Positions 1 to 50,142 of a stretch of DNA of 64,000 nt are shown here, piece after piece (the first letter of the stretch is position 1; every line of letters starts with the position of its first letter). The stretch lies in the NCBI GenBank assembly GCA_964057225.1, contig OZ059900.1:14508001-14572000 (forward strand), given 5' to 3'. This DNA comes from Auanema rhodensis (lineage: Eukaryota > Animalia > Nematoda). The notes beneath the pieces are model-generated. The model did not search any database, was not told the DNA's origin, and saw nothing but the letters and a program-made list of their open reading frames with translations. The position numbers were made by a program, and so were the translations under genes.

Positions 1-1
1 G

Positions 2-5993: not shown

Positions 5994-6241
5994 CTCTTTA
6001 TCTCCTTCCTTTCTAACTAGATCAAAACACATATGCATAACATATGTGTTAACATGTGGCATAAGTAACAGTTTATTTCAGAAGACCGCCCAACAACGGA
6101 GGACAGTCTTACATTTTCAACGTTCGCAGTCAGTGATTTTATTCCGTGCTTGTCTTGTTAATTCATCAATAAACCCTTTTCTACATATTCAATTTGTGTT
6201 TTACTTCCAACCATACTATACACTTGTGGTATATCGCCACA
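5890..6241 (+). repeat. 3' LTR of BEL-A (352 bp)
   Basis: TGTCGCGATA...TATCGCCACA terminal inverted repeat (9/10), preceded by GCCGGGAG, contains AATAAA; array sequence resumes at 6242. Confidence 0.85.
5951..5988. repeat. (TC)n microsatellite within the BEL-A LTR
   Basis: Visible dinucleotide run. Confidence 0.9.
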
Positions 6242-6301
6242 CATTTTTCTACTATAATTCAAACTCACACTCTTAATGAAAGTTTCTAAGTGCAAACTCA
6301 A

Positions 6302-6373
6302 TCCTCGGTAGTATAGTGGTGAGTATCCGCGTCTGTCACATGCGAGACCCGGGTTCAATTCCCGGCCGGGGAG
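6302..6373 (+). tRNA. tRNA-Asp(GTC), consensus
   Basis: TCCTCGG/CCGGGGA acceptor stem, CTGTCAC anticodon loop, GGTTCAATTCC B box, G73, followed by a T-run. Confidence 0.97.
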
Positions 6374-6377
6374 AATG

Positions 6378-6382
6378 TTTTT
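6378..6382 (+). terminator. Pol III oligo-dT terminator (present after every tRNA copy)
   Basis: TTTTT 4 nt after the discriminator base. Confidence 0.75.
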
Positions 6383-6676
6383 GTTCTGATTCATCGTTAT
6401 TGAATGTTATGCTATTTTTGTTTTTTTCCAAAAGTCGGATAAAAAAGATAATTATTAGAAAAAAGGTTGTTTTAAACTTTCTGTTTTTTCAAAAGTGATT
6501 TGAGCTTGTGTTTTTTTTCTAAATTGTTAAACATTTCCATTTAATTTAAATGTTCTATCTCAATTACGATGAAAAAAAATGGAACGTCAGCGTTAATCAA
6601 TTGTTCATTGTAACACCAAACTTCAATTAGCTCTTTGAGTAAAGTAGGCCATAAATCAAGATATGTTAGAGACAGT

Positions 6677-7110
6677 CGTTCCATGGTGGTTCCCCAGAGT
6701 TCCGGCTGGGTAACCACATGGAATTACTTTCTTTTCTTCCAAATATAAATGATAAAGAGTATAGAGAGAAAGGTTTATTCATGATAAAGTATACAAATTA
6801 CAATAATAAAAGTTACATAATGATTCCTAGTCGCAGCCCAAAGGACTCGTAAGGAAACCTTATATAGTTTTCCTTACGAGCATAAAAAGTGGTTATATCA
6901 GGTCCGCGGAACTTGGTTCCGCTTGAATTGGGCTTTCAATTTTTTTTTAAATTACTTTTTTAATTAAACTTAATATGAAAAAGTGTTCGTTCATTGTTGC
7001 ATTGAATTCCTGTTTCTCAAATGTAGCGTCAGCTATTTGTTTTTATAATGTTCCGTTTTATAAGCGATTGACGTTGTCAATCGCTCTACTCATAGGACAC
7101 GTATGGAACA
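6677..7110 (-). repeat. 3' LTR of Gypsy-A, truncated at its outer end
   Basis: Matches 18537-18949 with ~5 substitutions and a 21-bp indel; TATATAA and AATAAA on the minus strand. Confidence 0.9.
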
Positions 7111-7315
7111 TGCCTAATATCGAAAAAGTAGCTGACCTCAGCTACATCGAGAAAGTGAAATTCCATGCAAATGTGAGAGTTGTAGGAAATGTTTTTAAAA
7201 AAAATAAAGAATATTGGTAATATAGAATAATTTTATGAGAAAAAAATAAATTGAAACAATGTAATTACAAAATAATATATCATATATCATACTGGGAATC
7301 TTTCAAAAGTTCTTT

Positions 7316-7918
7316 TTAGTCTTCTTCATAATACTGGTGTATCTCTGGTAATGGTGATGATCCTAGGTCGTGGAGAAGATCCATAGTCTTGTTGCATAAA
7401 TCCGTTTTTCTTTCCATTTCTTCCTTGGTGGTTGCTGGTGATGCCAGAAATATTTGTAGAGCATTTATAATGCTTTTTCTTGCCTCTGTGGATGGCAGTT
7501 CGCTGCAATGTTGCAGGCTCCATTCTTGATAGGCCGAATGGGTCTCGGCAATAATCCAGTTTGGTGTCTGCTGTTCTGGTGAATCGCAACTAGGTGAATA
7601 ACCTAGTTGGTCCCTTAGTTCAGCAATGGCATCTCGGATGACTCCTGCTGTGTTGGTCCATGGTCCTATGCAGTGGTCAACCTCCGACAGTCGATCCTTG
7701 TCGTATTGGTAACATAGGATTTTGAGCGTTTCAGTACTAGTTTTCGCTCTTGTTAGTCCTTGAACTAACTCTTTCAGGATCTTCTCTTTCCTGGGGCGGT
7801 TGGCGATGGTATTGGCGCCTAGCTGCTTCAATTCTCTTACTAATAGTTGAATTGAAAGCCATCTCTTTTTGGCCATCATGAGGGGAATTTCGACGGCTTC
7901 AGGAAGTTGGGTGGACAT
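7316..7918 (-). CDS. Gypsy-A 3' accessory ORF, 200 aa, predicted helical, unknown function
   Basis: ATG-initiated ORF, same sense as pol, coding-like composition between two very AT-rich spacers. Confidence 0.65.
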   Translation of the reverse strand: MSTQLPEAVEIPLMMAKKRWLSIQLLVRELKQLGANTIANRPRKEKILKELVQGLTRAKTSTETLKILCYQYDKDRLSEVDHCIGPWTNTAGVIRDAIAELRDQLGYSPSCDSPEQQTPNWIIAETHSAYQEWSLQHCSELPSTEARKSIINALQIFLASPATTKEEMERKTDLCNKTMDLLHDLGSSPLPEIHQYYEED

Positions 7919-8281
7919 TGTTATCCTTGTTACTGTTTTCTGTCCTTTTATCCTTTTTAAAACTAGGTCGGTCTGTTCTTTCCTTTTTTGTCGCCTCCTT
8001 TTTGACCAGTTAGGTGAAAAAGTGATGAAGATTGTTGATTAAAACTTTGCAGTGATTTTTGAAAGATTCCAAGTATGATGTATAATTTTATTTTGAAATT
8101 TTGGTTATTAATACAATATTTTTATGAGAGTGAAAAATAAAAATGTACAATAAGTTGTGTAGAATTTTATGTATTACTTAAATGAGAAAAAAAAAATTAT
8201 ATATAGGTTCAAGTTTAGATGAAAATTATGAAAATGGTATTATACTTTTTGTGATTTTTATATAGAAATTATGGATTTTTA

Positions 8282-9162
8282 CTATTGTTCTAGCTTCTTA
8301 CTTGTAGTCCCAATAACTGTTGACGGTCTTTTCTTATGGATGACTGGTACTGTTGGTGCCACGAAGTTTGGGTCCGGGATCTGACTCTTCGAAACTCTCT
8401 TCTTCGGCTCTGTTACTGGTATGGTGCTGTGATACCTTATCGGCACATGATAAGGTTTTGCTGGCGTTGTAGGGGAATTATCTTCTAATCCCAATGCCAA
8501 TTTAAGTGCTGAACTCCATTTCTTAATTGTGGGTGGCTCCTTCTTCCGTTCCTCATATAATTCTTTCCTTGCGTTTTCTTCTATTTCCTCTGATAGTTTT
8601 TGAAAAGCCTTGATCGTCTGGTTTTGTTCTCTAGACTCTGTTGTTGACGTTTCCTCTGTGATTCCTGGTATTGGTGCGTCCTGATTTGGACTGATTTGTG
8701 AACTTTCCGCAAGTTCTATGTCTGTTTCCAAAGTATTTTCGTTGATATTTGTTGTCGACGGACTGTTTCGTGTAAATGGTTGTTCGTTTTGATAGAACGT
8801 TTCTTCTTCACTGTCCGAATCAGATAAATGAGTTCTGGTCATCAGTGTAATTTCTTCCGTTGGGTTGTCATCCGGAGGGAAAAATCTGATGTTATTTTTG
8901 TGAGCCTTCATCGTTTTTCCTTCACTATCTGCTAACGTAACGTTATTTCCAATTATCTTCTTGATGATATATGGTCCATCGCTCGTCTTTTGCAATTTGT
9001 TCGTTGGTTTTGCTCGTTTGACCAATGCCCTATCGTCTACGTAGATCTCTCATTCTTCCGTTCTGTGTTTCTCGTCATATTTCTTTTTCATCCTTTCATT
9101 ACTTAATTCAATTCTTTTCTGAATCTTCTCATGTAGATCTGGGGCGTTCTTGATTGGTGTTT
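8282..9162 (-). pseudogene. Disconnected integrase C-terminus of Gypsy-A (GPY module plus acidic tail)
   Basis: NKLQKTSDGPYII aligns with NKLTPSFEGPYLV of Gypsy-B; cut off by a 20-bp tandem duplication (9148-9187) and an in-frame TGA (9050-9052). Confidence 0.85.
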
Positions 9163-12100
9163 CTAGGTCTTGATTGGTGTTTCTAGGTCCTTATCCATTG
9201 GTAGACGAGCTGTTTGTCCAAATAGACAATCGTAGGGTGGTGTGCGAGTTGTGGCGTTTGGTAGTCGGTTGATCGTAAAGACAATTTTGGGTAAAATACT
9301 GTCCCAATTATCTTGATCGGCATTAACGTAAGAAGTTAATGCTTCTTCCAGCGTTCTATGTAGTCGTTCTACTTGACCATTTGCGTTCTTGTAGTATGGC
9401 ATAGTAGTGTGATGTTCCGATCCAAGGTTATCGCACATGCTTTTGAATTCGTGTGAGACAAAGTTTGATCCATTGTCTGTGATGATTTTCTTTGGGCGTC
9501 CGAAGACATAGAATAAGTGTGTCATAATAGCTGATACTATTTCTTCTGATGTCTGACGAATTAATGGTATCGCTATAATCCATTTGGAAAATGCGTCCTG
9601 TATAGATAAAATGTATCTATTATCCTTTGCAGTTCTAGGTAATGGTCCTAGTATGTCCATGTGAACTCGTTCCCATGGATGTGTCACTGTTGGGAAGTTT
9701 CTCATTGGTTCAACTGTGGCTTCATGTGGGTTATTTTTCCTCTTTGCACAGTCGAGACATCTGTTCACGTATCTTGTGATATCATCCTGTATTCCTGTCC
9801 AAGTGTACCGTCGCAAAATGGAGTCTTGAGTCTTATTGATTCCAAGATGTGCTCCGAGAATGGGGTCTTTGTGAAATTTCTCGATAATTGGTGTGGTAAT
9901 TGATGAGTCACTTGGCAGAATAGCTCGTGGAGTTTGTAGAGCTGATTTGGGTTTAGCGTATAGAACATCGTTCAAAACAATGTATCTATCCGTTAGTTGT
10001 GTCCCAGCGTTGTTATTTGACAGCTTCTCTTTAGTTTCTTTGATCCATTCTGTGTCGTTTTGAATGGTCCTTAGGTCCGTTACAGTTGAGATTGTCGAAA
10101 CTTGATGAGATGTTGTCTTTATTGTCGGCTTCTTTTTCCTTTCTTTTGCTTCGTTAATTTCGTCCTCAAAGCACCTTGATAAAGCGTCGCAAACGCTATT
10201 AAGGCGTCCTGGGCGATAGATAATTTCAATGTCATACTCTTGGAGTACTATCTGAAATTTGGCTAATCTTCCAATAAGATCTTTCCTCGTCATGAGACTG
10301 GTTAAGGGTCTATGATCGGTAATAATTTTGATCGGTGCCCCTAGGATGTAGGTACGAAATTGGTGAACCGCAAAGGTTAGAGCTAAGGCTTCAATCTCAA
10401 TGGGGGGATAGTTCCTTTCTGCTCTGTTCAGTTTACGGCTAGCGAAAGCTATTGGGTGCAGTGGTTCTCGATCGTCCGCGGATTGCAATAAAACTGCTCC
10501 TACTGCAATAGTGCTTCCGTCGCTTTCGACTACATATGGCCGTTTTGCTCTAGGCGCTTGGAGGACTGGTGCTTCACAAAGTGCTTTCTTTAGGTGTTGA
10601 AAAGATTTTTCTTCTTTGTCTCCCCATGTGAAGGTTTTATCCTTTTTTGTGAGGTCATAAAGCGGTGATGCAATGCCTGCGGCATTCCTAATGAATCTCC
10701 GGAAGTAGTTTACAACTCCCATGAATGCTCGAACTCCTGTGATTGATTTTGGTCTTGGATAATCTTGGATTGCTTTTACTTTCTGCGGGTCTGGTTTTAT
10801 TCCTTCGTGTCCAACAATGAATCCTAGGAATTTGACTTCTTGTTGTCCAAAGGTACATTTCTTAAGCTTGATTTTCAATCCTAGCTCTGCTGATGCGTTC
10901 AGTACTTCGTCGATATCTTGTAAATGTTTTGTCGTTGATTCCGATATGAGAAGTAGATCGTCGAGATAGACGAAGAGCTTGCATCGTACGTGTTGTTGTA
11001 AATATCGTACTGCATTTTGGAATGTGTGTGGAGCTCCGCAGAGTCCCATCGGCATTCTGCAGTATTGATAAGTTCCGCTCGTAGTAGTGAATGCGGTGAG
11101 GTGTCTATCTTCTGATCTAAGAGGGATTTGAAAGAATCCAGATACTAGATCAAAGTTACTGAAGATACGTGCTCCGGCTGCTAGGTCCAAGATATCTTGA
11201 ATGTTAGATATAACGTAGATTTGTTTTTGCGTTATTGCGTTAAGTGCTCGAAAATCAGTCACAAATCTATCTGTTTTATCCTTTTTCTTGACCAATATTA
11301 CGGGACTGGTAGTCATAGAAAAAGATGGCTCAATTATTCCTTGTTCTAACATTTCCTCCACTTGTTTTTCTACTTCTTCTTGTTGTGATAGAGGTATTCT
11401 GTACGTGATCTTGAAAGATGGAACTTTTCCTTCGATGATCGGGATGCTATGTTCCACTGGTTCTTTGAAAAGTCCGATATTTCGATCCTCGTTCAAGAAA
11501 GCTTCCTTATTTCTAAGTACTATTTTCTTTAATTGTTGTCTTTCTAATTGAGTGAAGATGGAATTTGAGACATCTAGATCTTTTATGAAATCATCTGGAA
11601 AGAATGGTAGTTGATCTTCCCATCTTGCTTCTGGTGGTACATATTGTCCTTTTTGCTCCTCCGTGTTTTTGGGGATAGCATAAGCTGTTCCAATGCCTTG
11701 GTTTGTCTGGACTTCGATTGTATCCGAAGAGATATTTGTAGCAAATATCTGGACTCCATATCCTGTTGGGGTGAAAGTTGTAGGCGCAAAACTCATTTTT
11801 CCTGTTCGTTGTGAGCTTCTAATGAAAGCTTGTTCGAATGAGGCGGGATCATTTACTTCCAAAGTTAGAGATCTTGTTTCTCCGGGGTAAAATTGTTTAG
11901 TTTCCAGACTAACAACGTGTGTAATTGTGTGTTTTTCTGTCCATGCATTGTAGTTTTGCGCTAGAGGTACCGTGGTATCTCCAATCAGCAATGAATTTTG
12001 CAGAGGGCGTAAGGATGTGAGGATTCCTTCTCTGTTGAGTGCTTCAATAAAATCTATTCCAAGCAATATTGGTGCTGGGCAATGATTGTCAGAAGATATC

Positions 12101-15100
12101 AATATTTTGTGGTCAATTTCGGTCTTTCCAATTATTATTGGCAGTCTTGTATATCCTAGGAAGGAAAATCGAGACTTGTTTGCTACAACAGCTGTAGTTT
12201 TCTCAGCGACCATTTTTGCTGCCGGTAATTGATTGAAAGTGCTCTCTTTCATATATGAAATTGATGCACCTGTATCCCATAATGCAGTAAAAACTTGGTT
12301 GTAAATTGATATGGGTACGAATGGTAATCGGGATCCTCCAATGTAGTTTATCTTTGATTCTTTAATAGCGTACCTGGGCAGATAGGTTAGCAGATCGCTA
12401 TCTGTTAATGGTGCATCGGGATCATAGCGTGAGAGTGGAGCATGGTAGTTGTCTTGTGTCGCTCTTCTTAACGGCTGAAGTTCGGTCTCTTGGGCTGGAT
12501 GTTCTCTTCTTTCTTCGTCATCTTCTTCGATATAATTGATGGGAATTCTTGTGACACGTGCGTATATTTTGATTCCGTAAATCAGCGCGGTGATGAGTCC
12601 TATTATCACGATGATTGCGCCGATTGTGGCAAGTGTTCTTAATAGCCAGGCCTTGAAAGTTTCTCCAATAAAAGTGAAGAAGCTGGAAATTCCTTCGTTT
12701 GCCGTGTTTCCGACGATGTCTCCCACTACGATAGGAATTTTTATGGCATTTTCAAGGATGTTGAGTGGATTCAGACTGATTCCTTTCTTGTTGTTAAATA
12801 TAGGTTTCAATCTTCCTGGCAAGGTGGCTTGTAGAGACGCTAGACTGGATCCGTATGAAATAGCGAGTTCAAACGGGAATGAAGATTCCGTGAGGTTGGC
12901 ATATATGTTGGAGTTGTTGAATTTTATGTGATCGATTTTGATCGAAGTGAGTTCGTCCGCAAATGATAGGTTCGTCACATTTAGTGTTGTGTTTTCCTTC
13001 ATCCATTGGTCGTCTAATTTATATGGATCCGTTGTAGCCATCATGCAGTCGATTCGTCTGCCCATTGGTGAAATATCGCGTGTTCCAGGTATTAAAAACA
13101 GTTCTCCATGATGTTCTGTATCTACTGGTGTTTCCATGTAACATGTTCCGTTTCTTTTGTGATCCGAGTAGATTTTTGTTACGTGGATAGGTGTGCAAGG
13201 CATTACGTAGATAAGGTGTTCAGCAACAAATTTAGCTGATATATCCTGACGTCTAAGCATTGTGCGGATACCAATAGTTGGGTTGATTTGTAGAATGGCC
13301 CACCACGTAAGGAGTTGTTTGTTTTGCATCCTACAGATGTCCTTTTTCGTTTTTTGAAACGCCTTCAAAATTTCTTCTTCTAGTTGCGAGGTTGAATATT
13401 GTAGATGCGATTGTGTATCCAGTTGACGTAATTGTTCATCATATTTCTGGATGATATCATGTCTTGTACGAAGAAAATTAGCGTGTGCTTGCTGTCCTAT
13501 GTGAGATTGAACTTCTCTTGCTTGTTGAGGTGTTGTGGCGGCTCGTTTGGTTGTTGTCCTTGGCTCTATCACTGTTGAAGAGATTTGCGGAATTTCTGTT
13601 CGCGTTACAAGCTGTTTTGGTAATGAGAATGGCGTTGTCGTAGCTTGATAGTAGTGATATCTTCTTGGAGTAGTTGTAGAGCTTGGTGATAATGTTCTGG
13701 GAGTGTGGAAAGGTTTGGGAGTAGTTCGAAAAGTTGTTGTTGTAGTCGCGTGCGTAGTAGAGCTTGTAGTGCTTGCGGAAGTCGTGGTAGTCGTAGTCGT
13801 TGTTGTTGAATACGTGAGGGAGTCGATTAATTCAAGATATGTTCGTTGAAATCTCTCGCTTTCTTCCTGTGAAATAGTTTTAGTCGTTGGTGTACCACGT
13901 GGCAGTCCGAAGTTCTGAGCTAGTCCTTCAAAGATGATTGCGTAATTAGGAAAAATAATCCTTGGACTAGTTGATTCCTCTTCCAATTTATTCCACTTTC
14001 TGCTCTCTTTTTCGCGTTCTTCTGTTGATATATGTAGCAGACGATTATGTGATGCTATATAGTCAATAAAGTTTAATACTTCGTCGATTTGTGTGTAAAA
14101 CGAAATGTCCATTCTAGGAGTTGTTCTTCTCGACATCCTAGGTGGGTATAGTTGAAATAAATATTCTTCTAATGAAGGAATCGTTTCTCCTGTTGCTAAT
14201 ACTGCGGGAGTTTGTGCGATTTCAAATGCAATGTCTCTCGCTCGCTCTAAGTAGTCTCCTGTGCGTTTTTCCAACTTATCGGCGAACTCCTCAATCGTGA
14301 TTTGTTTACTCAGTTTTTCTGTGAGCTCAGATGGTAGGAGATGCGCGATAGCAATTTCTGTTGCTAGGAGAATTTCTGCTTTTGCCAGTGCATGTAGAAT
14401 GGCGATATTAGTGTCGTTGTAGTTGTACCATAATAGTGTTTCCTTGATCGCGATTGCGTCTAACTTGAGGAATTTTGTAAGTCCTACGTGAATACTGGAA
14501 GTTTTCAGATAGTCTATGAGACTGTAAGAATTATCCAATCTTTTCCGGTTGCGATACTTCTGATACATTGGAATAATTCCTGTAGAGCTGTCCGTAAGAC
14601 GTAATGATGGATATATGGTGATATTGAAAAAGCGTGTAGGGTATTCTTGTGGCGCTTTCCTTTTCTGTCGTCTTGGAGTCTCTTTAGGTGGTATATGAAT
14701 GTATGTACCACTATTCGTTGCATGTATATCCTTTCCTAAACATCGAGTTGCTATGTTATCCGGTTTCTGGTCTTGGAGGATAAATGCGCTCTGTATCTCC
14801 GAGATTAGGACTGTGTCGTTGTTGACAAGTGCTGAGAAGTTTCCTAAGGAGCTGAAGTCACATTCGTGATGGTCGTGAGGTGGTGTCCAAACGATTATGG
14901 CATTGTGCGTTGTACAAGTTCCTGCTTTCTTTGCACATCCTTCCGTGTTGAGAAAAAGGTCTGATATGATGATATCGTCATGTAGACAAGTCATCATTCC
15001 TCTTTCTAACGTTAATCTTGGAGTTGTGGTGCAAGATGTAGACCAAAATGAGTAAGACTGATTGTTTAAAGGTAAAGGTGCCTTAAATAGTCCTGGAGCT

Positions 15101-40493: not shown

Positions 40494-40565
40494 TCCTCGG
40501 TAGTAAAGTGGTGAGTATCCGCGTCTGTCACATGCGAGACCCGGGTTCAATTCCCGGCCGGGGAG
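40494..40565 (+). tRNA. tRNA-Asp(GTC) variant
   Basis: T13A. Confidence 0.9.
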
Positions 40566-40931: not shown

Positions 40932-41003
40932 TCCTCGGTAGTAAAGTGGTGAGTATCCGCGTCTGTCACATGCGAGACCCGGGTTCAATTCCCGGCCGGG
41001 GAG
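40932..41003 (+). tRNA. tRNA-Asp(GTC) variant
   Basis: T13A. Confidence 0.9.
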
Positions 41004-41370
41004 AATGTTTTTGTTCTGATTCATCGTTATTGAATGTTATGCTATTTTTGTTTTCTTCAAAAAGTCGGATAAAAACGATAATTATTAGAAAAAAGATTGT
41101 TTTAAACTTTCTGCTTTTTCAAAAGTGATTTGAGCTTGTGATTTTTTTTAAAATTTTCAAACATTTCTATTTAATTTAAGTGTTCTATATTAATTACGAT
41201 GAAAAAAATTGAAACGTCAGCGTTAATCAATTGTTCATTGTAACACCAAACTTCAATTAGCTCTTTGTGTAAAGTAGGCCATAAAACAAGATATGTTAGA
41301 GACAGTGTTTCATTTTTCTACTTTAATTCAAACTCACACTCTTAATGAAAATTTCTAAGGGCAAATTCAG

Positions 41371-41442
41371 TCCTCGGTAGTATAGTGGTGAGTATCCGCG
41401 TCTGTCACATGCGAGACCCGGGTTCTATTCCCGGCCGGGGAG
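41371..41442 (+). tRNA. tRNA-Asp(GTC) variant
   Basis: A57T. Confidence 0.85.
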
Positions 41443-41809
41443 AATGTTTTTGTTCTGATTCATCGTTATTGAATGTTATGCTATTTTTGTTTTCTTCAAA
41501 AAGTCGGATAAAAACGATAATTATTAGAAAAAAGATTGTTTTAAACTTTCTGCTTTTTCAAAAGTGATTTGAGCTTGTGATTTTTTTTTAAATTTTCAAA
41601 TATTTCTATTTAATTTAAGTGTTCTATATTAATTACGATGAAAAAAATTGAAACGTCAGCGTTAATCAATTGTTCATTGTAACACCAAACTTCAATTAGC
41701 TCTTTGTGTAAAGTAGGCCATAAATCAAGATATGTTAGAGACAGTCTTTCATTTTCCTACTTTAATTCAAACTCACACTCTTAATGAAAGTTTCTAAGTG
41801 CAAATTCAA

Positions 41810-41881
41810 TCCTCGGTAGTAAAGTGGTGAGTATCCGCGTCTGTCACATGCGAGACCCGGGTTCAATTCCCGGCCGGGGAG
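41810..41881 (+). tRNA. tRNA-Asp(GTC) variant
   Basis: T13A. Confidence 0.9.
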
Positions 41882-42248
41882 AATGTTTTTGTTCTGATTC
41901 ATCGTTATTGAATGTTATGCTATTTTTGTTTTCTTCAAAAAGTCGGATAAAAACGATAATTATTAGAAAAAAGATTGTTTTAAACTCTCTGCTTTTTCAA
42001 AAGTGATTTGAGCTTGTGATTTTTTTTCAAATTTTCAAACATTTCTATTTAATTTAAGTGTTCTATATTAATCACGATGAAAAAAATTGAAACGTCAGCG
42101 TTAATCAATTGTTCATTGTAACACCAAACTTCAATTAGCTCTTTGTGTAAAGTAGGCCATAAAACAAGATATGTTAGAGACAGTGTTTCATTTTTCTACT
42201 TTAATTCAAACTCACACTCTTAATGAAAGTTTCTAAGTGCAAGTTCAA

Positions 42249-42320
42249 TCCTCGGTAGTATAGTGGTGAGTATCCGCGTCTGTCACATGCGAGACCCGGG
42301 TTCAATTCCCGGCCGGGGAG
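42249..42320 (+). tRNA. tRNA-Asp(GTC)
   Basis: Consensus copy. Confidence 0.95.
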
Positions 42321-42687
42321 AATGTTTTTTTTCTGATTCATCGTTATTGAATGTTATGCTATTTTTGTTTTCTTCAAAAAGTCGGATAAAAACGATAATT
42401 ATTAGAAAAAAGATTGTTTTAAACTTTCTGCTTTTTCAAAAGTGATTTGAGCTTGTGATTTTTTTTAAAATTTTCAAACATTTCTATTTAATTTAAGTGT
42501 TCTATATTAATTACGATGAAAAAAATTGAAACGTCAGCGTTAATCAATTGTTCATTGTAACACCAAACTTCAATTAGCTCTTTGTGTAAAGTAGGCCATA
42601 AAACAAGATATGTTAGAGACAGTGTTTCATTTTTCTACTTTAATTCAAACTCACACTCTTAATGAAAATTTCTAAGGGCAAATTCAG

Positions 42688-42759
42688 TCCTCGGTAGTAT
42701 AGTGGTGAGTATCCGCGTCTGTCACATGCGAGACCCGGGTTCTATTCCCGGCCGGGGAG
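42688..42759 (+). tRNA. tRNA-Asp(GTC) variant
   Basis: A57T. Confidence 0.85.
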
Positions 42760-43126
42760 AATGTTTTTGTTCTGATTCATCGTTATTGAATGTTATGCTA
42801 TTTTTGTTTTCTTCAAAAAGTCGGATAAAAACGATAATTATTAGAAAAAAGATTGTTTTAAACTTTCTGCTTTTTCAAAAGTGATTTGAGCTTGTGATTT
42901 TTTTTTAAATTTTCAAATATTTCTATTTAATTTAAGTGTTCTATATTAATTACGATGAAAAAAATTGAAACGTCAGCGTTAATCAATTGTTCATTGTAAC
43001 ACCAAACTTCAATTAGCTCTTTGTGTAAAGTAGGCCATAAATCAAGATATGTTAGAGACAGTCTTTCATTTTCCTACTTTAATTCAAACTCACACTCTTA
43101 ATGAAAGTTTCTAAGTGCAAATTCAA

Positions 43127-43198
43127 TCCTCGGTAGTAAAGTGGTGAGTATCCGCGTCTGTCACATGCGAGACCCGGGTTCAATTCCCGGCCGGGGAG
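43127..43198 (+). tRNA. tRNA-Asp(GTC) variant
   Basis: T13A. Confidence 0.9.
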
Positions 43199-43565
43199 AA
43201 TGTTTTTGTTCTGATTCATCGTTATTGAATGTTATGCTATTTTTGTTTTCTTCAAAAAGTCGGATAAAAACGATAATTATTAGAAAAAAGATTGTTTTAA
43301 ACTCTCTGCTTTTTCAAAAGTGATTTGAGCTTGTGATTTTTTTTCAAATTTTCAAACATTTCTATTTAATTTAAGTGTTCTATATTAATCACGATGAAAA
43401 AAATTGAAACGTCAGCGTTAATCAATTGTTCATTGTAACACCAAACTTCAATTAGCTCTTTGTGTAAAGTAGGCCATAAAACAAGATATGTTAGAGACAG
43501 TGTTTCATTTTTCTACTTTAATTCAAACTCACACTCTTAATGAAAGTTTCTAAGTGCAAGTTCAA

Positions 43566-43637
43566 TCCTCGGTAGTATAGTGGTGAGTATCCGCGTCTGT
43601 CACATGCGAGACCCGGGTTCAATTCCCGGCCGGGGAG
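43566..43637 (+). tRNA. tRNA-Asp(GTC)
   Basis: Consensus copy. Confidence 0.95.
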
Positions 43638-44003
43638 AATGTTTTTTTTCTGATTCATCGTTATTGAATGTTATGCTATTTTTGTTTTCTTCAAAAAGTC
43701 GGATAAAAACGATAATTATTAGAAAAAAGATTGTTTTAAACTTTCTGCTTTTTCAAAAGTGATTTGAGCTTGTGTTTTTTTTTAAATTCTTAAACATTTC
43801 CATTTAATTTAAATGTTCTATCTCAATTACGATGAAAAAAATTGAAACGTCAGCGTTAATCAATTGTTCATTCTAACACCAAACTTCAATTAGCTCTTTG
43901 AGTAAAGTAGGCCATAAATCAAGATATGTTAGAGACAGTGTTTCATTTTTCTACTTTAATTCAAACTCACACTCTTAATGAAAGTTTCTAAGTGCAAATT
44001 CAA

Positions 44004-44075
44004 TCCTCGGTAGTATAGTAGTGAGTATCCGCGTCTGTCACATGCGAGACCCGGGTTCAATTCCCGGCCGGGGAG
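44004..44075 (+). tRNA. tRNA-Asp(GTC) variant
   Basis: G18A. Confidence 0.85.
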
Positions 44076-44441
44076 AATGTTTTTGTTCTGATTCATCGTT
44101 ATTGAATGTTATGCTATTTTTGTTTTCTTCAAAAAGTCGGATAAAGACGATAATTATTAGAAAAAAAAATTGTTTTAAACTTTCTGCTTTTTCAAAAGTG
44201 ATTTGAGCTTGTGATTTTTTTAAATTCTTAAACATTTCTATTTAATTTAAGTGTTCTATATTAATTACGATGAAAAAAATTGAAACGTCAGCGTTAATCA
44301 ATTGTTCATTGTAACACCAAACTTCAATTAGCTCTTTGTGTGAAGTAGGCCATAAAACAAGATATGTTAGAGACAGTGTTTCATTTTTCTACTTTAATTC
44401 AAACTCACACTCTTAATGAAAGTTTCTAAGTGCAAATTCAA

Positions 44442-44513
44442 TCCTCGGTAGTATAGTGGTGAGTATCCGCGTCTGTCACATGCGAGACCCGGGTTCAATT
44501 CCCGGCCGGGGAA
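44442..44513 (+). tRNA. tRNA-Asp(GTC) variant
   Basis: Discriminator G73A. Confidence 0.85.
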
Positions 44514-44879
44514 AATGTTTTTGTTCTGATTCATCGTTATTGAATGTTATGCTATTTTTGTTTTCTTCAAAAAGTCGGATAAAAACGATAATTATTAGAA
44601 AAAAGATTGTTTTAAACTTTCTGCTTTTTCAAAAGTGATTTGAGCTTGTGTTTTTTTTTAAATTCTTAAACATTTCCATTTAATTTAAATGTTCTATCTC
44701 AATTACGATGAAAAAAATTGAAACGTCAGCGTTAATCAATTGTTCATTCTAACACCAAACTTCAATTAGCTCTTTGAGTAAAGTAGGCCATAAATCAAGA
44801 TATGTTAGAGACAGTGTTTCATTTTTCTACTTTAATTCAAACTCACACTCTTAACGAAAGTTTCTAAGTGCAAATTCAA

Positions 44880-44951
44880 TCCTCGGTAGTATAGTAGTGA
44901 GTATCCGCGTCTGTCACATGCGAGACCCGGGTTCAATTCCCGGCCGGAGAG
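44880..44951 (+). tRNA. tRNA-Asp(GTC) variant
   Basis: G18A, G70A. Confidence 0.8.
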
Positions 44952-45318
44952 AATGTTTTTGTTCTGATTCATCGTTATTGAATGTTATGCTATTTTTGTT
45001 TTCTTCAAAAAGTCGGATAAAGACAATAATTATTAGAAAAAAGATTGTTTTAAACTTTCTGCTTTTTCAAAAGTGGTTTGAGCTTGTGATTTTTTTTTAA
45101 ATTTTCAAACATTTCTATTTAATTTAAGTGTTCTATCTTAATTACGATGAAAAAAATTGAAACGTCAGCGTTAATCAATTGTTCATTGTAACACCAAACT
45201 TCAATTAGCTCTTTGTGTAAAGTAGGCCATAAAACAAGATATGTTAGAGACAGTGTTTCATTTTTCTACTTTAATTCAAACTCACACTCTTAATGAAAGT
45301 TTCTAAGTGCAAATTCAA

Positions 45319-45390
45319 TCCTCGGTAGTATAGTGGTGAGTATCCGCGTCTGTCACATGCGAGACCCGGGTTCAATTCCCGGCCGGGGAG
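45319..45390 (+). tRNA. tRNA-Asp(GTC)
   Basis: Consensus copy. Confidence 0.95.
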
Positions 45391-45757
45391 AATGTTTTTG
45401 TTCTGATTCATCGTTATTGAATGTTATGCTATTTTTGTTTTCTTCAAAAAGTCGGATAAAAACGATAATTATTAGAAAAAAGATTGTTTTAAACTTTCTG
45501 CTTTTTCAAAAGTGATTTGAGCTTGTGATTTTTTTTTAAATTTTCAAATATTTCTATTTAATTTAAGTGTTCTATATTAATTACGATGAAAAAAATTGAA
45601 ACGTCAGCGTTAATCAATTGTTCATTGTAACACCAAACTTCAATTAGCTCTTTGTGTAAAGTAGGCCATAAATCAAGATATGTTAGAGACAGTCTTTCAT
45701 TTTCCTACTTTAATTCAAACTCACACTCTTAATGAAAGTTTCTAAGTGCAAATTCAA

Positions 45758-45829
45758 TCCTCGGTAGTAAAGTGGTGAGTATCCGCGTCTGTCACATGCG
45801 AGACCCGGGTTCAATTCCCGGCCGGGGAG
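45758..45829 (+). tRNA. tRNA-Asp(GTC) variant
   Basis: T13A. Confidence 0.9.
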
Positions 45830-46196
45830 AATGTTTTTGTTCTGATTCATCGTTATTGAATGTTATGCTATTTTTGTTTTCTTCAAAAAGTCGGATAAAA
45901 ACGATAATTATTAGAAAAAAGATTGTTTTAAACTCTCTGCTTTTTCAAAAGTGATTTGAGCTTGTGATTTTTTTTCAAATTTTCAAACATTTCTATTTAA
46001 TTTAAGTGTTCTATATTAATCACGATGAAAAAAATTGAAACGTCAGCGTTAATCAATTGTTCATTGTAACACCAAACTTCAATTAGCTCTTTGTGTAAAG
46101 TAGGCCATAAAACAAGATATGTTAGAGACAGTGTTTCATTTTTCTACTTTAATTCAAACTCACACTCTTAATGAAAGTTTCTAAGTGCAAGTTCAA

Positions 46197-46268
46197 TCCT
46201 CGGTAGTATAGTGGTGAGTATCCGCGTCTGTCACATGCGAGACCCGGGTTCAATTCCCGGCCGGGGAG
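46197..46268 (+). tRNA. tRNA-Asp(GTC)
   Basis: Consensus copy. Confidence 0.95.
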
Positions 46269-46634
46269 AATGTTTTTTTTCTGATTCATCGTTATTGAAT
46301 GTTATGCTATTTTTGTTTTCTTCAAAAAGTCGGATAAAAACGATAATTATTAGAAAAAAGATTGTTTTAAACTTTCTGCTTTTTCAAAAGTGATTTGAGC
46401 TTGTGATTTTTTTTAAATTTTCAAACATTTCTATTTAATTTAAGTGTTCTATATTAATCACGATGAAAAAAATTGAAACGTCAGCGTTAATCAATTGTTC
46501 ATTCTAACACCAAACTTCAATTAGCTCTTTGAGTAAAGTAGGCCATAAATCAAGATATGTTAGAGACAGTGTTTCATTTTTCTACTTTAATTCAAACTCA
46601 CACTCTTAACGAAAGTTTCTAAGTGCAAATTCAA

Positions 46635-46706
46635 TCCTCGGTAGTATAGTAGTGAGTATCCGCGTCTGTCACATGCGAGACCCGGGTTCAATTCCAGGCC
46701 GGGGAG
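46635..46706 (+). tRNA. tRNA-Asp(GTC) variant
   Basis: G18A, T-stem C63A. Confidence 0.8.
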
Positions 46707-47072
46707 AATGTTTTTGTTCTGATTCATCGTTATTGAATGTTATGCTATTTTTGTTTTCTTCAAAAAGTCGGATAAAAACGATAATTATTAGAAAAAAGAT
46801 TGTTTTAAACTTTCTGCTTTTTCAAAAGTGATTTGAGCTTGTGATTTTTTTTAAATTCTTAAACATTTCCATTTAATTTAAATGTTCTATCTCAATTACG
46901 ATGAAAAAAATTGAAACGTCAGCGTTAATCAATTGTTCATTCTAACACCAAACTTCAATTAGCTCTCTGAGTAAAGTAGGCCATAAATCAAGATATGTTA
47001 GAGACAGTGTTTCATTTTTCTACTTTAATTCAAACTCACACTCTTAATGAAAGTTTCTAAGTGCAAATTCAA

Positions 47073-47144
47073 TCCTCGGTAGTATAGTAGTGAGTATCCG
47101 CGTCTGTCACATGCGAGACCCGGGTTCAATTCCCGGCCGGGGAG
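47073..47144 (+). tRNA. tRNA-Asp(GTC) variant
   Basis: G18A. Confidence 0.85.
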
Positions 47145-47511
47145 AATGTTTTTGTTCTGATTCATCGTTATTGAATGTTATGCTATTTTTGTTTTCTTCA
47201 AAAAGTCGGATAAAGACGATAATTATTAGAAAAAAAAATTGTTTTAAACTTTCTGCTTTTTCAAAAGTGATTTGAGCTTGTGATTTTTTTTAAATTCTTA
47301 AACATTTCTATTTAATTTAAGTGTTCTATATTAATTACGATGAAAAAAATTGAAACGTCAGCGTTAATCAATTGTTCATTGTAACACCAAACTTCAATTA
47401 GCTCTTTGTGTGAAGTAGGCCATAAAACAAGATATGTTAGAGACAGTGTTTCATTTTTCTACTTTAATTCAAACTCACACTCTTAATGAAAGTTTCTAAG
47501 TGCAAATTCAA

Positions 47512-47583
47512 TCCTCGGTAGTATAGTGGTGAGTATCCGCGTCTGTCACATGCGAGACCCGGGTTCAATTCCCGGCCGGGGAA
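47512..47583 (+). tRNA. tRNA-Asp(GTC) variant
   Basis: G73A. Confidence 0.85.
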
Positions 47584-47950
47584 AATGTTTTTGTTCTGAT
47601 TCATCGTTATTGAATGTTATGCTATTTTTGTTTTCTTCAAAAAGTCGGATAAAAACGATAATTATTAGAAAAAAGATTGTTTTAAACTTTCTGCTTTTTC
47701 AAAAGTGATTTGAGCTTGTGATTTTTTTTTAAATTTTCAAACATTTTTATTTAATTTAAGTGTTCTATATTAATTACGATGAAAAAAATTGAAACGTCAG
47801 CGTTAATCAATTGTTCATTGTAACACCAAACTTCAATTAGTTCTTTGTGTAAAGTAGGCCATAAAACAAGATATGTTAGAGACAGTGTTTCATTTTTCTA
47901 CTTTAATTCAAACTCACACTCTTAATGAAAGTTTCTAAGTGCAAATTCAA

Positions 47951-48022
47951 TCCTCGGTAGTATAGTGGTGAGTATCCGCGTCTGTCACATGCGAGACCCG
48001 GGTTCAATTCCCGGCCGGGGAG
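47951..48022 (+). tRNA. tRNA-Asp(GTC)
   Basis: Consensus copy. Confidence 0.95.
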
Positions 48023-48388
48023 AATGTTTTTGTTCTGATTCATCGTTATTGAATGTTATGCTATTTTTGTTTTCTTCAAAAAGTCGGATAAAGACGATAA
48101 TTATTAGAAAAAAGATTGTTTTAAACTTTCTGCTTTTTCAAAAGTGATTTGAGCTTGTGATTTTTTTTAAATTCTTAAACATTTCCATTTAATATAAATG
48201 TTCTATCTCAATTACGATGAAAAAAATTGAAACGTCAGCGTTAATCAATTGTTCATTCTAACACCAAACTTCAATTAGCTCTTTGAGTAAAGTAGGCCAT
48301 AAATCAAGATATGTTAGAGACAGTGTTTCATTTTTCTACTTTAATTCAAACTCACACTCTTAATGAAAGTTTCTAAGTGCAAATTCAA

Positions 48389-48460
48389 TCCTCGGTAGTA
48401 TAGTGGTGAGTATCCGCGTCTGTCACATGCGAGACCCGGGTTCAATTCCCGGCCGGGGAG
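48389..48460 (+). tRNA. tRNA-Asp(GTC)
   Basis: Consensus copy. Confidence 0.95.
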
Positions 48461-48826
48461 AATGTTTTTGTTCTGATTCATCGTTATTGAATGTTATGCG
48501 ATTTTTGTTTTCTTCAAAAAGTCGGATAAAGACGATAATTATTAGAAAAAAGATTGTTTTAAACTTTCTGCTTTTTCAAAAGTGATTTGAGCTTGTGATT
48601 TTTTTTAAATTCTTAAACATTTCCATTTAATATAAATGTTCTATCTCAATTACGATGAAAAAAATTGAAACGTCAGCGTTAATCAATTGTTCATTCTAAC
48701 ACCAAACTTCAATTAGCTCTTTGAGTAAAGTAGGCCATAAATCAAGATATGTTAGAGACAGTGTTTCATTTTTCTACTTTAATTCAAACTCACACTCTTA
48801 ATGAAAGTTTCTAAGTGCAAATTCAA

Positions 48827-48898
48827 TCCTCGGTAGTATAGTAGTGAGTATCCGCGTTTGTCACATGCGAGACCCGGGTTCAATTCCCGGCCGGGGAG
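48827..48898 (+). tRNA. tRNA-Asp(GTC) variant
   Basis: G18A, C32T. Confidence 0.8.
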
Positions 48899-49265
48899 AA
48901 TGTTTTTGTTCTGATTCATCGTTATTGAATGTTATGCTATTTTTGTTTTCTTCAAAAAGTCGGATAAAGACGATAATTATTAGAAAAAAGATTGTTTTAA
49001 ACTTTCTGCTTTTTCAAAAGTGGTTTGAGCTTGTGATTTTTTTTTAAATTTTCAAACATTTCTATTTAATTTAAGTGTTCTATCTTAATTACGATGGAAA
49101 AAATTGAAACGTCAGCGTTAATCAATTGTTCATTGTAACACCAAACTTCAATTAGCTCTTTGTGTAAAGTAGGCCATAAAACAAGATATGTTAGAGACAG
49201 TGTTTCATTTTTCTACTTTAATTCAAACTCACACTCTTAATGAAAGTTTCTAAGTGCAAATTCAA

Positions 49266-49337
49266 TCCTCGGTAGTATAGTGGTGAGTATCCGCGTCTGT
49301 CACATGCGAGACCCGGGTTCAATTCCCGGCCGGGGAG
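49266..49337 (+). tRNA. tRNA-Asp(GTC)
   Basis: Consensus copy. Confidence 0.95.
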
Positions 49338-49709
49338 AATGTTTTTGTTCTGATTCATCGTTATTGAATGTTATGCTATTTTTGTTTTTTTCCAAAAGTC
49401 GGATAAAAAAGATAATTATTAGAAAAAAGGTTGTTTTATTTTAAACTTTCTGTTTTTTCAAAAGTGATTTGAGCTTGTGTTTTTTTTCTAAATTGTTAAA
49501 CATTTCCATTTAATTTAAATGTTCTATCTCAATTACGATGAAAAAAAATGGAACGTCAGCGTTAATCAATTGTTCATTGTAACACCAAACTTCAATTAGC
49601 TCTTTGAGTAAAGTAGGCCATAAATCAAGATATGTTAAAGACAGTGTTTCATTTTTCTACTTTAATTCAAACTCACACTCTTAATGAAAGTTTCTAAGTG
49701 CAAATTCAA

Positions 49710-49781
49710 TCCTCGGTAGTATAGTGGTGAGTATCCGCGTCTGTCACATGCGAGACCCGGGTTCAATTCCCGGCCGGGGAG
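49710..49781 (+). tRNA. tRNA-Asp(GTC)
   Basis: Consensus copy. Confidence 0.95.
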
Positions 49782-50142
49782 AATGTTTTTGTTCTGATTC
49801 ATCGTTATTGAATGTTATGCTATTTTTGTTTTTTTCCAAAAGTCGGATAAAAACGATAATTATTAGAAAAAAGATTGTTTTAAACTTTCTGCTTTTTCAA
49901 AAGTGATTTGAGCTTGTGATTTTTTTTCAAATTTTCAAACATTTCTATTTAATTTAAGTGTTCTATATTAATTACGATGAAAAAAATTGAAACGTCAGCG
50001 TTAATCAATTGTTCATTGTAACACCAAACTTCAATTAGCTCTTTGTGTAAAGTAGGCCATAAAACAAGATATGTTAGAGACTGTCGCTTCGGCGAAGGTA
50101 TTCGGTTGTCGGTATTCCGCTGAGAATTAATAGAACAGATAG

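What the first reader, a model, noticed from the sequence alone, without database searches (positions are those of the whole stretch)
6241..50082. Unrelated retroelements land in a ~15-bp window 60-75 bp upstream of tRNA-Asp genes: candidate Pol III-directed targeting in an animal
Seen: relative to tRNA +1, the BEL-A LTR end joins the array at -60 (6241/6242), the Gypsy-A right end at -75 (18949/18950), its left junction at -64 (6676/6677), and the BEL-B LTR end at -67 (50081/50082). Three of four elements, from two superfamilies and both orientations, fall in ~15 bp of a 439-bp unit. Gypsy-B is the exception, 132 bp downstream of a tRNA. Established: yeast Ty1/Ty3 and Dictyostelium TRE5/DGLT-A integrate at defined distances upstream of tRNA genes through contacts with Pol III or TFIIIB/C. 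Inference: these elements convergently target the zone just upstream of the TFIIIB footprint and use the redundant array as a safe haven. The sample is small (3 of 4), and a local sequence or chromatin hotspot (GTTAGAGACAGTG) is an alternative.
Basis: partly seen in the sequence, partly recalled or inferred. Interest (0 to 1): 0.85.

Follow-up and report, generated by a model that had tools for sequence, protein, structure and literature searches.

The report
Retroviruses cluster upstream of tRNA-Asp genes
In a nematode tandem array of tRNA-Asp genes, three of four unrelated endogenous retroviruses sit with their ends within about 17 bp of each other, 60-76 bp upstream of a tRNA gene; this could be the first tRNA-gene-directed integration seen in an animal, but four insertions in one array cannot prove it.

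Summary
The window is a 439-bp tandem array of 58 tRNA-Asp(GTC) genes, broken by four young, mutually distant envelope-carrying retroelements of a rhabditid nematode. Two are Atlas-type BEL/Pao elements. Two are gag-env(gB)-pol Ty3/gypsy elements.

Re-annotation strengthens them. I corrected the BEL-B LTR to 296 bp, not 1096 bp. With that correction, every junction in the -76 to -60 zone is a canonical LTR terminus. The two junctions that break the pattern are secondary deletion breakpoints (BEL-B right side at +74, Gypsy-B right side). Gypsy-B's own LTR end lies outside the zone, at +204.

Gypsy-A has an 11-bp flank overlap where relatives make 4-5 bp. This is best read as two insertions 7 bp apart that later recombined.

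Chance gives p of about 0.014-0.05 for 3 of 4 events and 0.001-0.007 for 4 of 5, both post hoc.

The Pol III mechanism is untested. Every unit has the same sequence, so distance and local sequence cannot be separated. No other copy from this species is in any accessible database. Seven flanked loci of relatives in other nematodes have no tRNA gene within up to 10 kb of the matched gene. It is a good, testable lead, not a demonstrated targeting system.

The parts
6242..6676 (+). One array unit (tRNA-Asp at 6302-6373) lying between BEL-A and Gypsy-A. It runs from phase -60 to phase -65 of the next unit.
18950..25372 (+). tRNA-Asp array segment of 14.6 units of 439 bp. It starts at phase -75 and ends at unit position 204.
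34964..50081 (+). tRNA-Asp array segment of 34.5 units. It starts at unit position 175 and ends at phase -68.
60301..64000 (+). tRNA-Asp array segment with a 3-unit higher-order repeat. It starts at +74, two bases after a missing tRNA's 3' end and just before the T5 terminator.
19388..19408 (+). Example of the insertion zone in an intact unit: -76 to -56 upstream of tRNA 19464. It contains GTTAGAGACAGTGTTTC, an imperfect palindrome centred at -66.
   Evidence: no stable single-strand structure
1..6241 (+). BEL-A, an Atlas-type BEL/Pao endogenous retrovirus whose 5' part is off the window. ORF 110-5050 carries the Pao domain, IN, DUF5641 and a phlebovirus G2-like Env. An accessory ORF lies at 5392-5859.
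5890..6241 (+). BEL-A 3' LTR of 352 bp (TGTCGCGAT...CGCCACA). Its canonical CA end abuts array base -60.
   Evidence: same LTR-start design in relatives
6677..18949 (-). Gypsy-A, a gag-env(gB-like)-PR-RT-RH-IN Ty3/gypsy endogenous retrovirus with both LTRs. The main ORF is 9163-17100 (2645 aa). The C-terminal part of IN is out of frame after 9163 and also carries an in-frame stop.
6677..7111 (-). Gypsy-A 3' LTR. Its sense 3' terminus (...GGAACG) abuts array base -65.
18537..18949 (-). Gypsy-A 5' LTR. Its sense 5' terminus (TGTTCC...) abuts array base -75. The PBS lies at 18517-18536. It differs from the 3' LTR by 5 substitutions and one 21-bp indel.
25373..34963 (-). Gypsy-B, a second gag-env(gB-like)-pol element with ORF 26347-33951 (2534 aa). 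Its sense 3' terminus (...GTAACG) sits at unit position 204. The 5' LTR is absent, so the right junction is a deletion.
50082..50150 (-). BEL-B: the last 69 nt of a truncated third LTR copy. Its canonical ...GCGACA terminus abuts array base -68.
50149..51127 (-). BEL-B: a duplicated PBS, leader and first ~232 gag codons. It is a tandem second unit with a large internal deletion.
51128..51423 (-). BEL-B complete LTR of 296 bp (TGTCGCGG...GCGACA).
51436..59900 (-). BEL-B coding region. A single Gag-Pol-Env polyprotein ORF spans 51987-59900 (2637 aa). A 156-aa Cys/His-rich accessory ORF spans 51436-51906.
60170..60300 (-). BEL-B 5' LTR remnant (the last 117 bp, 60184-60300) plus the PBS TGGTGCATCGACC (60170-60182). 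The first 179 bp of the LTR and array positions -67 to +73, including the whole tRNA, are deleted. The junction has 2-nt microhomology.

Best explanation
The tRNA-Asp array is a tolerated landing pad. Within each 439-bp unit there is a real preferred integration zone about 56-76 bp upstream of the mature tRNA start. This zone sits at the upstream border of the Pol III pre-initiation complex.

Proposed mechanism (inferred): TFIIIC/TFIIIB bound to each gene fixes the local chromatin. That either exposes or bends the DNA at its upstream edge, or offers a protein surface that the intasomes contact. Integrases of unrelated elements (Atlas-type BEL/Pao and gag-env-pol gypsy) therefore join their LTR ends there in either orientation.

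Later unequal exchange and deletions within the array reshaped the insertions:
- a tandem BEL-B unit formed;
- 5' LTRs and neighbouring array were lost;
- two Gypsy-A insertions probably merged into one.

Shown: the junction positions, the canonical LTR termini, the independence of the families, and the secondary nature of the out-of-zone junctions.
Inferred: that the bias is real and not chance, and that the Pol III complex causes it.
For: - Four canonical LTR termini from three unrelated families, in both orientations, fall at -61/-60, -65/-64, -68/-67 and -76/-75.
- BEL-B's terminus is canonical once the LTR is correctly defined. The LTR start and PBS design are shared with A. ceylanicum and H. 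contortus relatives.
- The two junctions that seemed to contradict the pattern are deletions. BEL-B's 5' LTR lacks its first 179 bp. Gypsy-B lacks its 5' LTR, and its 30-bp flank overlap differs at a polymorphic array position.
- Relatives make 4-5 bp duplications. Gypsy-A's 11-bp overlap therefore suggests two hits 7 bp apart, giving 4 of 5 events in the zone (p=0.0008-0.007).
- Each unit is a complete Pol III gene, with A and B boxes and a T5 terminator read directly from the sequence.
- The zone is only slightly more distal than the windows known for TRE5 (40-54 bp) and NLTR-B (39-64 bp) (PMC5911963).
- Four different young families occupy 25.6 kb of array.
Against: - There are only four elements in one array, and the finding was picked post hoc.
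- With 3 of 4 events, p is 0.014 under uniformity and 0.05 if only GC-richer islands are eligible.
- Distance and local sequence are fully confounded, because all units are alike.
- Gypsy-B integrated elsewhere, at +204.
- Seven flanked loci of relatives in C. brenneri, A. ceylanicum, H. contortus, N. americanus and N. brasiliensis have no tRNA gene within up to 10 kb of the matched gene. Three short contigs with little flank (C. auriculariae L002, 7.5 kb; Auanema L045, 5 kb; part of L047) also have none. Nor do 32 metagenomic gypsy loci.
- No targeting module is shared between the two superfamilies.
- No tRNA-directed LTR element is reported in animals in the library searched.
Confidence: 0.4

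Rival explanations
1. Chance clustering in a permissive array. The redundant tRNA-Asp array simply tolerates insertions, so young elements persist there. Three of four happening to lie within 16 bp is a coincidence, picked out after the fact.
For: - The nominal p is only 0.014-0.05 for 3 of 4, before any correction for the many windows and patterns the first-stage reader could have flagged.
- Relatives elsewhere are not near tRNA genes.
- Gypsy-B lies elsewhere in the unit.
- The absence of nesting among the elements is not significant; my estimate is about 0.19.
Against: - If Gypsy-A represents two insertions, 4 of 5 events are in the zone (p=0.0008-0.007).
- All in-zone junctions are canonical LTR ends, and all non-canonical junctions are out of the zone. 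That is the pattern expected if the zone reflects integration, not rearrangement.
Confidence: 0.3
2. A local DNA sequence or shape hotspot that is independent of Pol III. The mixed-sequence, imperfectly palindromic stretch GAGACAGTGTTTC, set in an otherwise A/T-tract-rich spacer, is an intrinsically favoured integrase target. It occurs once per unit.
For: - Integrases favour weakly palindromic, bendable targets (general knowledge).
- The zone is one of about six GC-richer islands in a spacer of 26% GC.
- The palindrome is centred at -66, in the middle of the junctions.
- The array sequence TGTTTCATT at -65 to -57 resembles the LTR termini of BEL-B's duplicated end and of Gypsy-A.
Against: - Two superfamilies with 4- to 5-bp staggered cuts at four different phosphodiester positions spread over 16 bp do not look like recognition of one sequence.
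- Other islands of similar composition (for example unit positions 281-296 and 307-360) carry no insertion.
- There is no stable hairpin or cruciform.
Confidence: 0.2
3. Capture of retroviral cDNA at a recurrent DNA break upstream of the tRNA gene (a replication/Pol III conflict site), by repair and not by integrase.
For: At first sight BEL-B and Gypsy-B have non-canonical ends, missing or long 'duplications', and a 141-bp target deletion.
Against: After re-annotation, every in-zone junction is an exact LTR terminus. The aberrant junctions lie at the opposite, out-of-zone sides and are explained by later deletions and tandem duplication.
Confidence: 0.05

Closest known systems
Dictyostelid TRE5-A and NLTR-B (non-LTR elements; 40-54 and 39-64 bp upstream of the tRNA coding sequence; TRE5 ORF1 binds TFIIIB)
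   Same: A narrow window a few tens of bp upstream of the mature tRNA start, just beyond the TFIIIB position. The use of tRNA genes as safe sites is also shared (PMC5911963).
   Different: - Those are L1-type elements integrating by target-primed reverse transcription, with a fixed orientation. Here the elements are LTR/integrase elements in both orientations.
- The window here is 56-76 bp, slightly more distal.
- The host is an animal.
- Genome-wide association is not shown here.
Ty3, Tj1, DGLT-A and other Ty3/gypsy elements that target tRNA genes (1-33 bp upstream; Ty3 IN binds TFIIIB/TFIIIC)
   Same: Same superfamily as Gypsy-A and Gypsy-B. Integration is integrase-mediated, upstream of tRNA genes, in either orientation.
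   Different: - Those insert at or within about 30 bp of the transcription start, inside the TFIIIB footprint region. Here the distance is 60-76 bp.
- No IN-TFIIIB contact has been tested here.
- The nematode elements carry a gB-type env between gag and pol.
Ty1/Ty2/Ty4 (copia; roughly 1-kb window upstream of Pol III genes; Ty1 IN binds Pol III subunits; nucleosome-phased hot spots)
   Same: Integration lies upstream of the Pol III complex and not at the start site. A chromatin-phased pattern could also accommodate Gypsy-B, which sits 235 bp upstream of the next tRNA, about 167 bp from the zone (speculative).
   Different: A different superfamily and a broad periodic window, against a 17-bp cluster here. 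No periodicity can be shown with four events.
R1/R2 and other array-specific elements in rDNA (safe haven in a redundant tandem gene array)
   Same: Use of a redundant, tandemly repeated RNA-gene array, where losing a few units is harmless.
   Different: R elements use a sequence-specific endonuclease and cut inside the gene. Here the LTR elements insert in the spacer and leave the gene intact.
Atlas viruses (nematode belpaoviruses with phlebovirus-like Env; PMC9094657; bioRxiv 10.64898/2026.03.22.711591) and nematode GAG-ENV-POL gB errantivirus-like ERVs (Sacco 2022, as cited in PMC13524379)
   Same: BEL-A and BEL-B have the Atlas design: a single Gag-Pol-Env polyprotein, LTRs of about 300 bp, a TGGTGCATCG-type PBS and a G2 fusion domain. 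Gypsy-A and Gypsy-B have the gag-gB-pol order.
   Different: Only 39-41% (BEL) and up to 62% (gypsy) Pol identity to the nearest database members. Term searches of these papers found no mention of integration or insertion sites or of tRNA genes as targets; the only tRNA mentions are primer-binding sites.

Membership tests
Pol III-gene-directed retrotransposon integration (Ty1/Ty3/DGLT-A/TRE5 type) | Insertions at a narrow, reproducible distance from tRNA genes | tested here: inconclusive
   Three of four elements (four of five LTR-end junctions) lie at -76 to -60. p=0.014-0.05 for 3 of 4 and 0.0008-0.007 for 4 of 5, post hoc.
Pol III-gene-directed retrotransposon integration (Ty1/Ty3/DGLT-A/TRE5 type) | Association with many different Pol III genes genome-wide, irrespective of their flanking sequence | not testable with these tools
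   Only one array of identical units is visible. No same-species sequence was found in the protein, viral, metagenome or assembly collections.
Pol III-gene-directed retrotransposon integration (Ty1/Ty3/DGLT-A/TRE5 type) | Dependence on an assembled TFIIIC/TFIIIB complex (A/B-box mutations abolish targeting) and physical contact of an element protein with a Pol III factor | not testable with these tools
   This needs experiments. Sequence shows only that each unit has intact A and B boxes and a terminator.
Pol III-gene-directed retrotransposon integration (Ty1/Ty3/DGLT-A/TRE5 type) | Trait seen in related elements (supporting, not defining) | tested here: not met
   There are no tRNA genes within up to 10 kb of the matched gene at seven flanked loci of relatives in five other nematode species, in three short contigs, or in 32 metagenomic gypsy loci. 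These relatives are distant, at 39-62% Pol identity.
Canonical integrase insertion | Exact LTR termini flanked by a 4-6 bp target-site duplication | tested here: inconclusive
   The termini are exact at all in-zone junctions. The only element with both ends present, Gypsy-A, has an 11-bp overlap, against 4-5 bp in relatives. The others have lost one side.
Atlas-clade belpaovirus (BEL/Pao with phlebovirus-like Env) | Gag-Pol-Env in one ORF with RT, the Pao domain, IN (H2C2 plus DUF5641) and a phlebovirus G2 fusion domain; short LTRs | tested here: met
   Pfam hits at E=1e-42 (G2) and 1e-36 to 1e-39 (Pao), with a 2637-aa ORF in BEL-B. LTRs are 296 and 352 bp, and the PBS matches that of hookworm and Haemonchus relatives.
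Nematode GAG-ENV-POL Ty3/gypsy ERVs with gB-type Env | Order gag, gB-like class III fusogen, PR-RT-RH-IN, flanked by LTRs with a PBS | tested here: met
   The Pfam domain order lies within single ORFs of 2645 and 2534 aa. LTRs and a PBS are present in Gypsy-A. Gypsy-B lacks its 5' LTR. The arrangement is described in PMC13524379.

The most novel reading that the evidence does not exclude
Two unrelated retrovirus-like lineages of a nematode (an Atlas-type belpaovirus and a gag-env-pol metavirus) have each evolved integration directed by the Pol III machinery to a fixed zone about 60-75 bp upstream of tRNA genes. That would be the first tRNA-gene-directed integration known in an animal, and the first for BEL/Pao elements. 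It would have arisen convergently with yeast Ty and Dictyostelium elements.
Probability: 0.17. Interest if true: 0.85.

Novelty: new variant of a known kind. Interest (0 to 1): 0.55.

Why it matters
In the library searched, tRNA-gene targeting is reported only from yeasts and social amoebae with compact genomes. Reviews from 2018 and 2026 list no animal case.

An animal example would show that the 'Pol III safe haven' strategy is more general. This one would involve envelope-bearing, potentially infectious retroelements of two superfamilies. It would give a metazoan system for asking how intasomes read Pol III chromatin. It would also bear on how tandem tRNA arrays evolve under retroelement invasion.

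Even if the bias is only a chromatin or sequence hotspot, the locus is a clean natural record of repeated independent integrations into identical targets.

Tried and rejected
1. Same-species copies. An exact look-up of the four polyproteins found nothing. A search with the gag N-terminus duplicated beside the BEL-B LTR found nothing. Viral-contig scans with both Pol regions found nothing. A metagenome scan with a 30-mer of the array found nothing. A profile scan of metagenomes returned only 27-42% relatives. The decisive genome-wide test therefore could not be run.

2. Relatives' neighbourhoods. C. brenneri (two loci, three elements), C. auriculariae, Auanema, A. ceylanicum, H. contortus, N. 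americanus and N. brasiliensis all lack nearby tRNA genes. Two proteins were not on record.

3. Break-capture model. I considered this seriously while BEL-B looked non-canonical. I rejected it after finding the true 296-bp LTR and PBS.

4. Homology between a tRNA-Asp primer-binding site and the array. No such site exists in the window. From memory, the PBSs look like tRNA-Gln (Gypsy-A) and tRNA-Gly (BEL-B); this was not checked against this species' tRNAs.

5. Hairpin or cruciform at the zone. None found (z=+1.3).

6. Another Pol III or small-RNA gene in the spacer. Only tRNAs were found.

7. A targeting module shared by the BEL and gypsy proteins. None found.

8. Array sequence derived from an LTR. 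Only 12-15-nt chance matches.

9. A real 11-bp duplication. Judged unlikely, because relatives make 4-5 bp.

The only consensus made was of the host array.

Full report
WHAT IS THERE

The window is a head-to-tail array of tRNA-Asp(GTC) genes. There are 58 genes, all on the + strand, in a 439-bp unit that is 96-97% alike between copies. Each unit has a 72-nt tRNA with recognisable A and B boxes, a T5 terminator 6 nt after the gene, and a spacer of 26% GC. Only 26 of the 58 tRNAs carry the modal sequence. The units fall into higher-order repeat patterns. Rfam finds nothing but tRNAs in the units.

Four insertions break the array and occupy 38 of the 64 kb.

WHAT THE FOUR ELEMENTS ARE

E1/BEL-A (1-6241, + sense) and BEL-B (50082-60300, - sense) are BEL/Pao elements. 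Their env resembles the phlebovirus G2 fusion protein (Pfam E=1e-42). BEL-B encodes Gag-Pol-Env as one 2637-aa ORF. This is the design of the nematode 'Atlas viruses' (PMC9094657; bioRxiv 10.64898/2026.03.22.711591).

Gypsy-A (6677-18949, - sense) and Gypsy-B (25373-34963, - sense) are Ty3/gypsy elements. A herpesvirus gB-like, class III fusion domain lies between gag and protease, within single ORFs of 2645 and 2534 aa. This non-canonical GAG-ENV-POL order is already described for nematodes (PMC13524379, citing Sacco et al. 2022).

The four are four distinct families. Gypsy-A and Gypsy-B share 36% amino-acid identity; BEL-A and BEL-B share 39%.

The host is a rhabditid (clade V) nematode that is not itself in the databases.
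- Best Pol matches for Gypsy-A: Auanema sp. JU1783 (62%), Heterorhabditis (56%), Caenorhabditis (43-50%).
- Best Pol matches for BEL-B: strongylids (Ancylostoma, Haemonchus, Necator) at 39-41%.
Nothing suggests a human contig.

THE JUNCTIONS

- BEL-A: the 3' LTR end (...CGCCACA) is followed by array base -60.
- Gypsy-A: the sense-3' LTR end follows array base -65.
- Gypsy-A: the sense-5' LTR start is followed by array base -75.
- BEL-B: the left edge follows array base -68.
- Gypsy-B: the LTR-like 3' end (...GTAACG, like Gypsy-A's ...GGAACG) follows unit position 204, which is 132 bp after a tRNA.

RE-ANNOTATION OF BEL-B

A 1096-bp repeat (50149-51244 = 59205-60300, one mismatch) looked like the LTR. 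It had an odd extra 69 bp at the array side and no TG start.

Reading the sense strand shows that the sequence ...GCGACA is followed by T and TGGTGCATCGACC. This is a primer-binding site identical in design to those of the A. ceylanicum and H. contortus relatives.

Upstream, after a 156-aa accessory ORF, the LTR starts TGTCGCGG. BEL-A's LTR (TGTCGCGAT) and the hookworm LTR (TGTCGCGAT) start the same way. The true LTR is therefore 296 bp (51128-51423), close to Atlas virus's 271 nt.

It follows that:
(a) The 5' LTR at 60184-60300 keeps only its last 117 bp. Its first 179 bp are gone, together with array positions -67 to +73, which include a whole tRNA. The junction has 2-nt microhomology. The right junction is therefore a deletion.
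(b) The '1096-bp repeat' is a tandem second unit (PBS, leader, first ~232 gag codons) with a large internal deletion.
(c) The 69 bp at 50082-50150 are the end of that unit's 3' LTR. Its ACA terminus at array -68/-67 is therefore a genuine LTR end.

GYPSY-B

Gypsy-B has no 5' LTR at all. Its flanks overlap by 30 bp but differ at unit position 183, a position that is polymorphic among array units. The two flanks therefore come from different units, and the right junction is again a deletion.

THE RESULTING PATTERN

Every junction in the -76 to -60 zone is a precise LTR terminus. Every imprecise junction lies elsewhere.

GYPSY-A

Both LTR ends are exact, yet the flanks overlap by 11 bp (TTAGAGACAGT). 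Relatives with clean ends make 4 bp (C. brenneri, ATAT) or about 5 bp (H. contortus BEL).

Gypsy-A's LTRs differ by 5 substitutions and a 21-bp indel, although a 2645-aa ORF survives. Together with the evidence for unequal exchange in BEL-B, the simplest reading is two Gypsy-A insertions 7 bp apart in different units, merged by recombination. A truly aberrant 11-bp duplication cannot be excluded.

This copy's integrase is damaged. After the catalytic core the reading frame changes near 9163, and the continuing frame holds a stop before the GPY/F-like C-terminal part.

IS IT MORE THAN CHANCE?

Results of the circular scan-statistic simulations:
- 3 of 4 events within 15 bp: p=0.014.
- Excluding the tRNA body: p=0.020.
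- Allowing only the GC-richer islands (137 positions): p=0.05.
- 4 of 5 events: p=0.0008, 0.0013 and 0.0066 respectively.

The zone is one of about six mixed-sequence islands in an A/T-tract-rich spacer. The finding was selected after the fact. The clustering is suggestive, not decisive.

TESTS OF THE MECHANISM

The key prediction is that other copies sit at the same distance from other Pol III genes. It could not be tested. No sequence of this species turned up in the exact-protein index, the 5.8-billion-protein search, viral contigs or metagenomes.

The nearest relatives that have flanking DNA were examined. These were seven flanked loci in C. brenneri, A. ceylanicum, H. contortus, N. americanus and N. 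brasiliensis, plus three short contigs with little flank (C. auriculariae 7.5 kb, Auanema 5 kb). None has a tRNA gene within the DNA fetched, up to 10 kb either side of the matched gene. Neither do 32 metagenomic gypsy loci. These relatives are distant, so this weakens the idea of an ancestral trait only mildly.

Other checks:
- No primer-binding site for tRNA-Asp exists in the window.
- No hairpin forms at the zone.
- No protein module is shared between the superfamilies.

The sequence at the zone is an imperfect palindrome centred at -66, which keeps a pure sequence or shape hotspot alive as an alternative. Because all units are identical, distance and sequence cannot be separated here.

COMPARISON WITH KNOWN SYSTEMS

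The review table in PMC5911963 gives these windows:
- Ty3: 1-4 bp upstream of the start site.
- Tj1: 1-10 bp.
- DGLT-A: 13-33 bp.
- TRE5: 40-54 bp upstream of the coding sequence.
- NLTR-B: 39-64 bp.
- Ty1/2/4: a window of about 1 kb.

The zone here (56-76 bp) is closest in position to the non-LTR TRE5 and NLTR-B elements, and more distal than any narrow-window LTR element. Neither that review, nor a 2016 survey, nor a 2026 review mentions an animal case. Targeted searches found none.

VERDICT

I put about 0.4 on a real Pol III-linked positional preference (tether or phased chromatin), 0.3 on chance, 0.2 on a local sequence hotspot, and 0.05 on break capture. The specific claim of convergent integrase-Pol III tethering in an animal gets about 0.17. 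If true it would be a notable first.

Noticed in passing
window 5392-5859 (+) and 51436-51906 (-): Both Atlas-type elements carry a homologous ~155-aa Cys/His-rich accessory ORF between env and the 3' LTR. The shared motif is C-x2-C...DGHRT..CPIY...C-x2-C...HH. There is no Pfam match. It is conserved although the two elements share only 39% identity overall.
   Followed up: partly
window 9163-17100 (-) and 26347-33951 (-): In both gypsy-type elements gag, the gB-like env and pol lie in one uninterrupted reading frame of about 2600 aa. The gag-env-pol order is published. I did not check whether a single fused ORF is usual.
   Followed up: no
window 8990-9200 (-), with 8282-9025 (-): Gypsy-A's integrase is broken after the catalytic core. 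A short repeated peptide (DLETPIK twice) coincides with a frame change at about 9163. The continuing frame has a stop before the GPY/F-like C-terminal domain. A long acidic, Ser/Thr-rich tail follows.
   Followed up: partly
window 7316-7918 (-): A 200-aa ORF with no Pfam match lies between pol and the 3' LTR of Gypsy-A. Gypsy-B has no equivalent.
   Followed up: no
window 50082-51423 and 59205-60300: BEL-B is a tandem LTR-internal-LTR-partial internal-LTR structure, with an internal deletion of roughly 8.1 kb (internal region plus the first 227 nt of the LTR) in the second unit and a truncated 5' LTR. This is evidence of unequal exchange and deletions inside the array.
   Followed up: yes
whole array, e.g. 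60667-63821: The array has higher-order structure. On the right there is a 3-unit repeat, which includes a 444-bp unit type with a TTTTA insertion at unit position 168. Only 26 of 58 tRNAs have the modal sequence. Several variants break acceptor-stem or T-arm pairs, so many copies may be pseudogenes.
   Followed up: partly
window 6677-6700, 18517-18560: Gypsy-A's U5 end and PBS both match the acceptor-stem strands of the same tRNA. From memory the LTR terminus GTTCCATGGTG resembles the tRNA-Gln 5' end, and the PBS complements its 3' end. This would give a U5/PBS inverted repeat.
   Followed up: no
L046 1-17540 (C. brenneri GL379857.1): In C. brenneri an Atlas-type BEL element (2517-aa product with the phlebovirus G2 domain) and a gypsy element with 100% identical 392-bp LTRs lie within about 8 kb of each other. 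There is no tRNA gene nearby.
   Followed up: partly
window 5990-6040 (+): A (CT)n microsatellite of about 40 bp lies inside the BEL-A 3' LTR.
   Followed up: no
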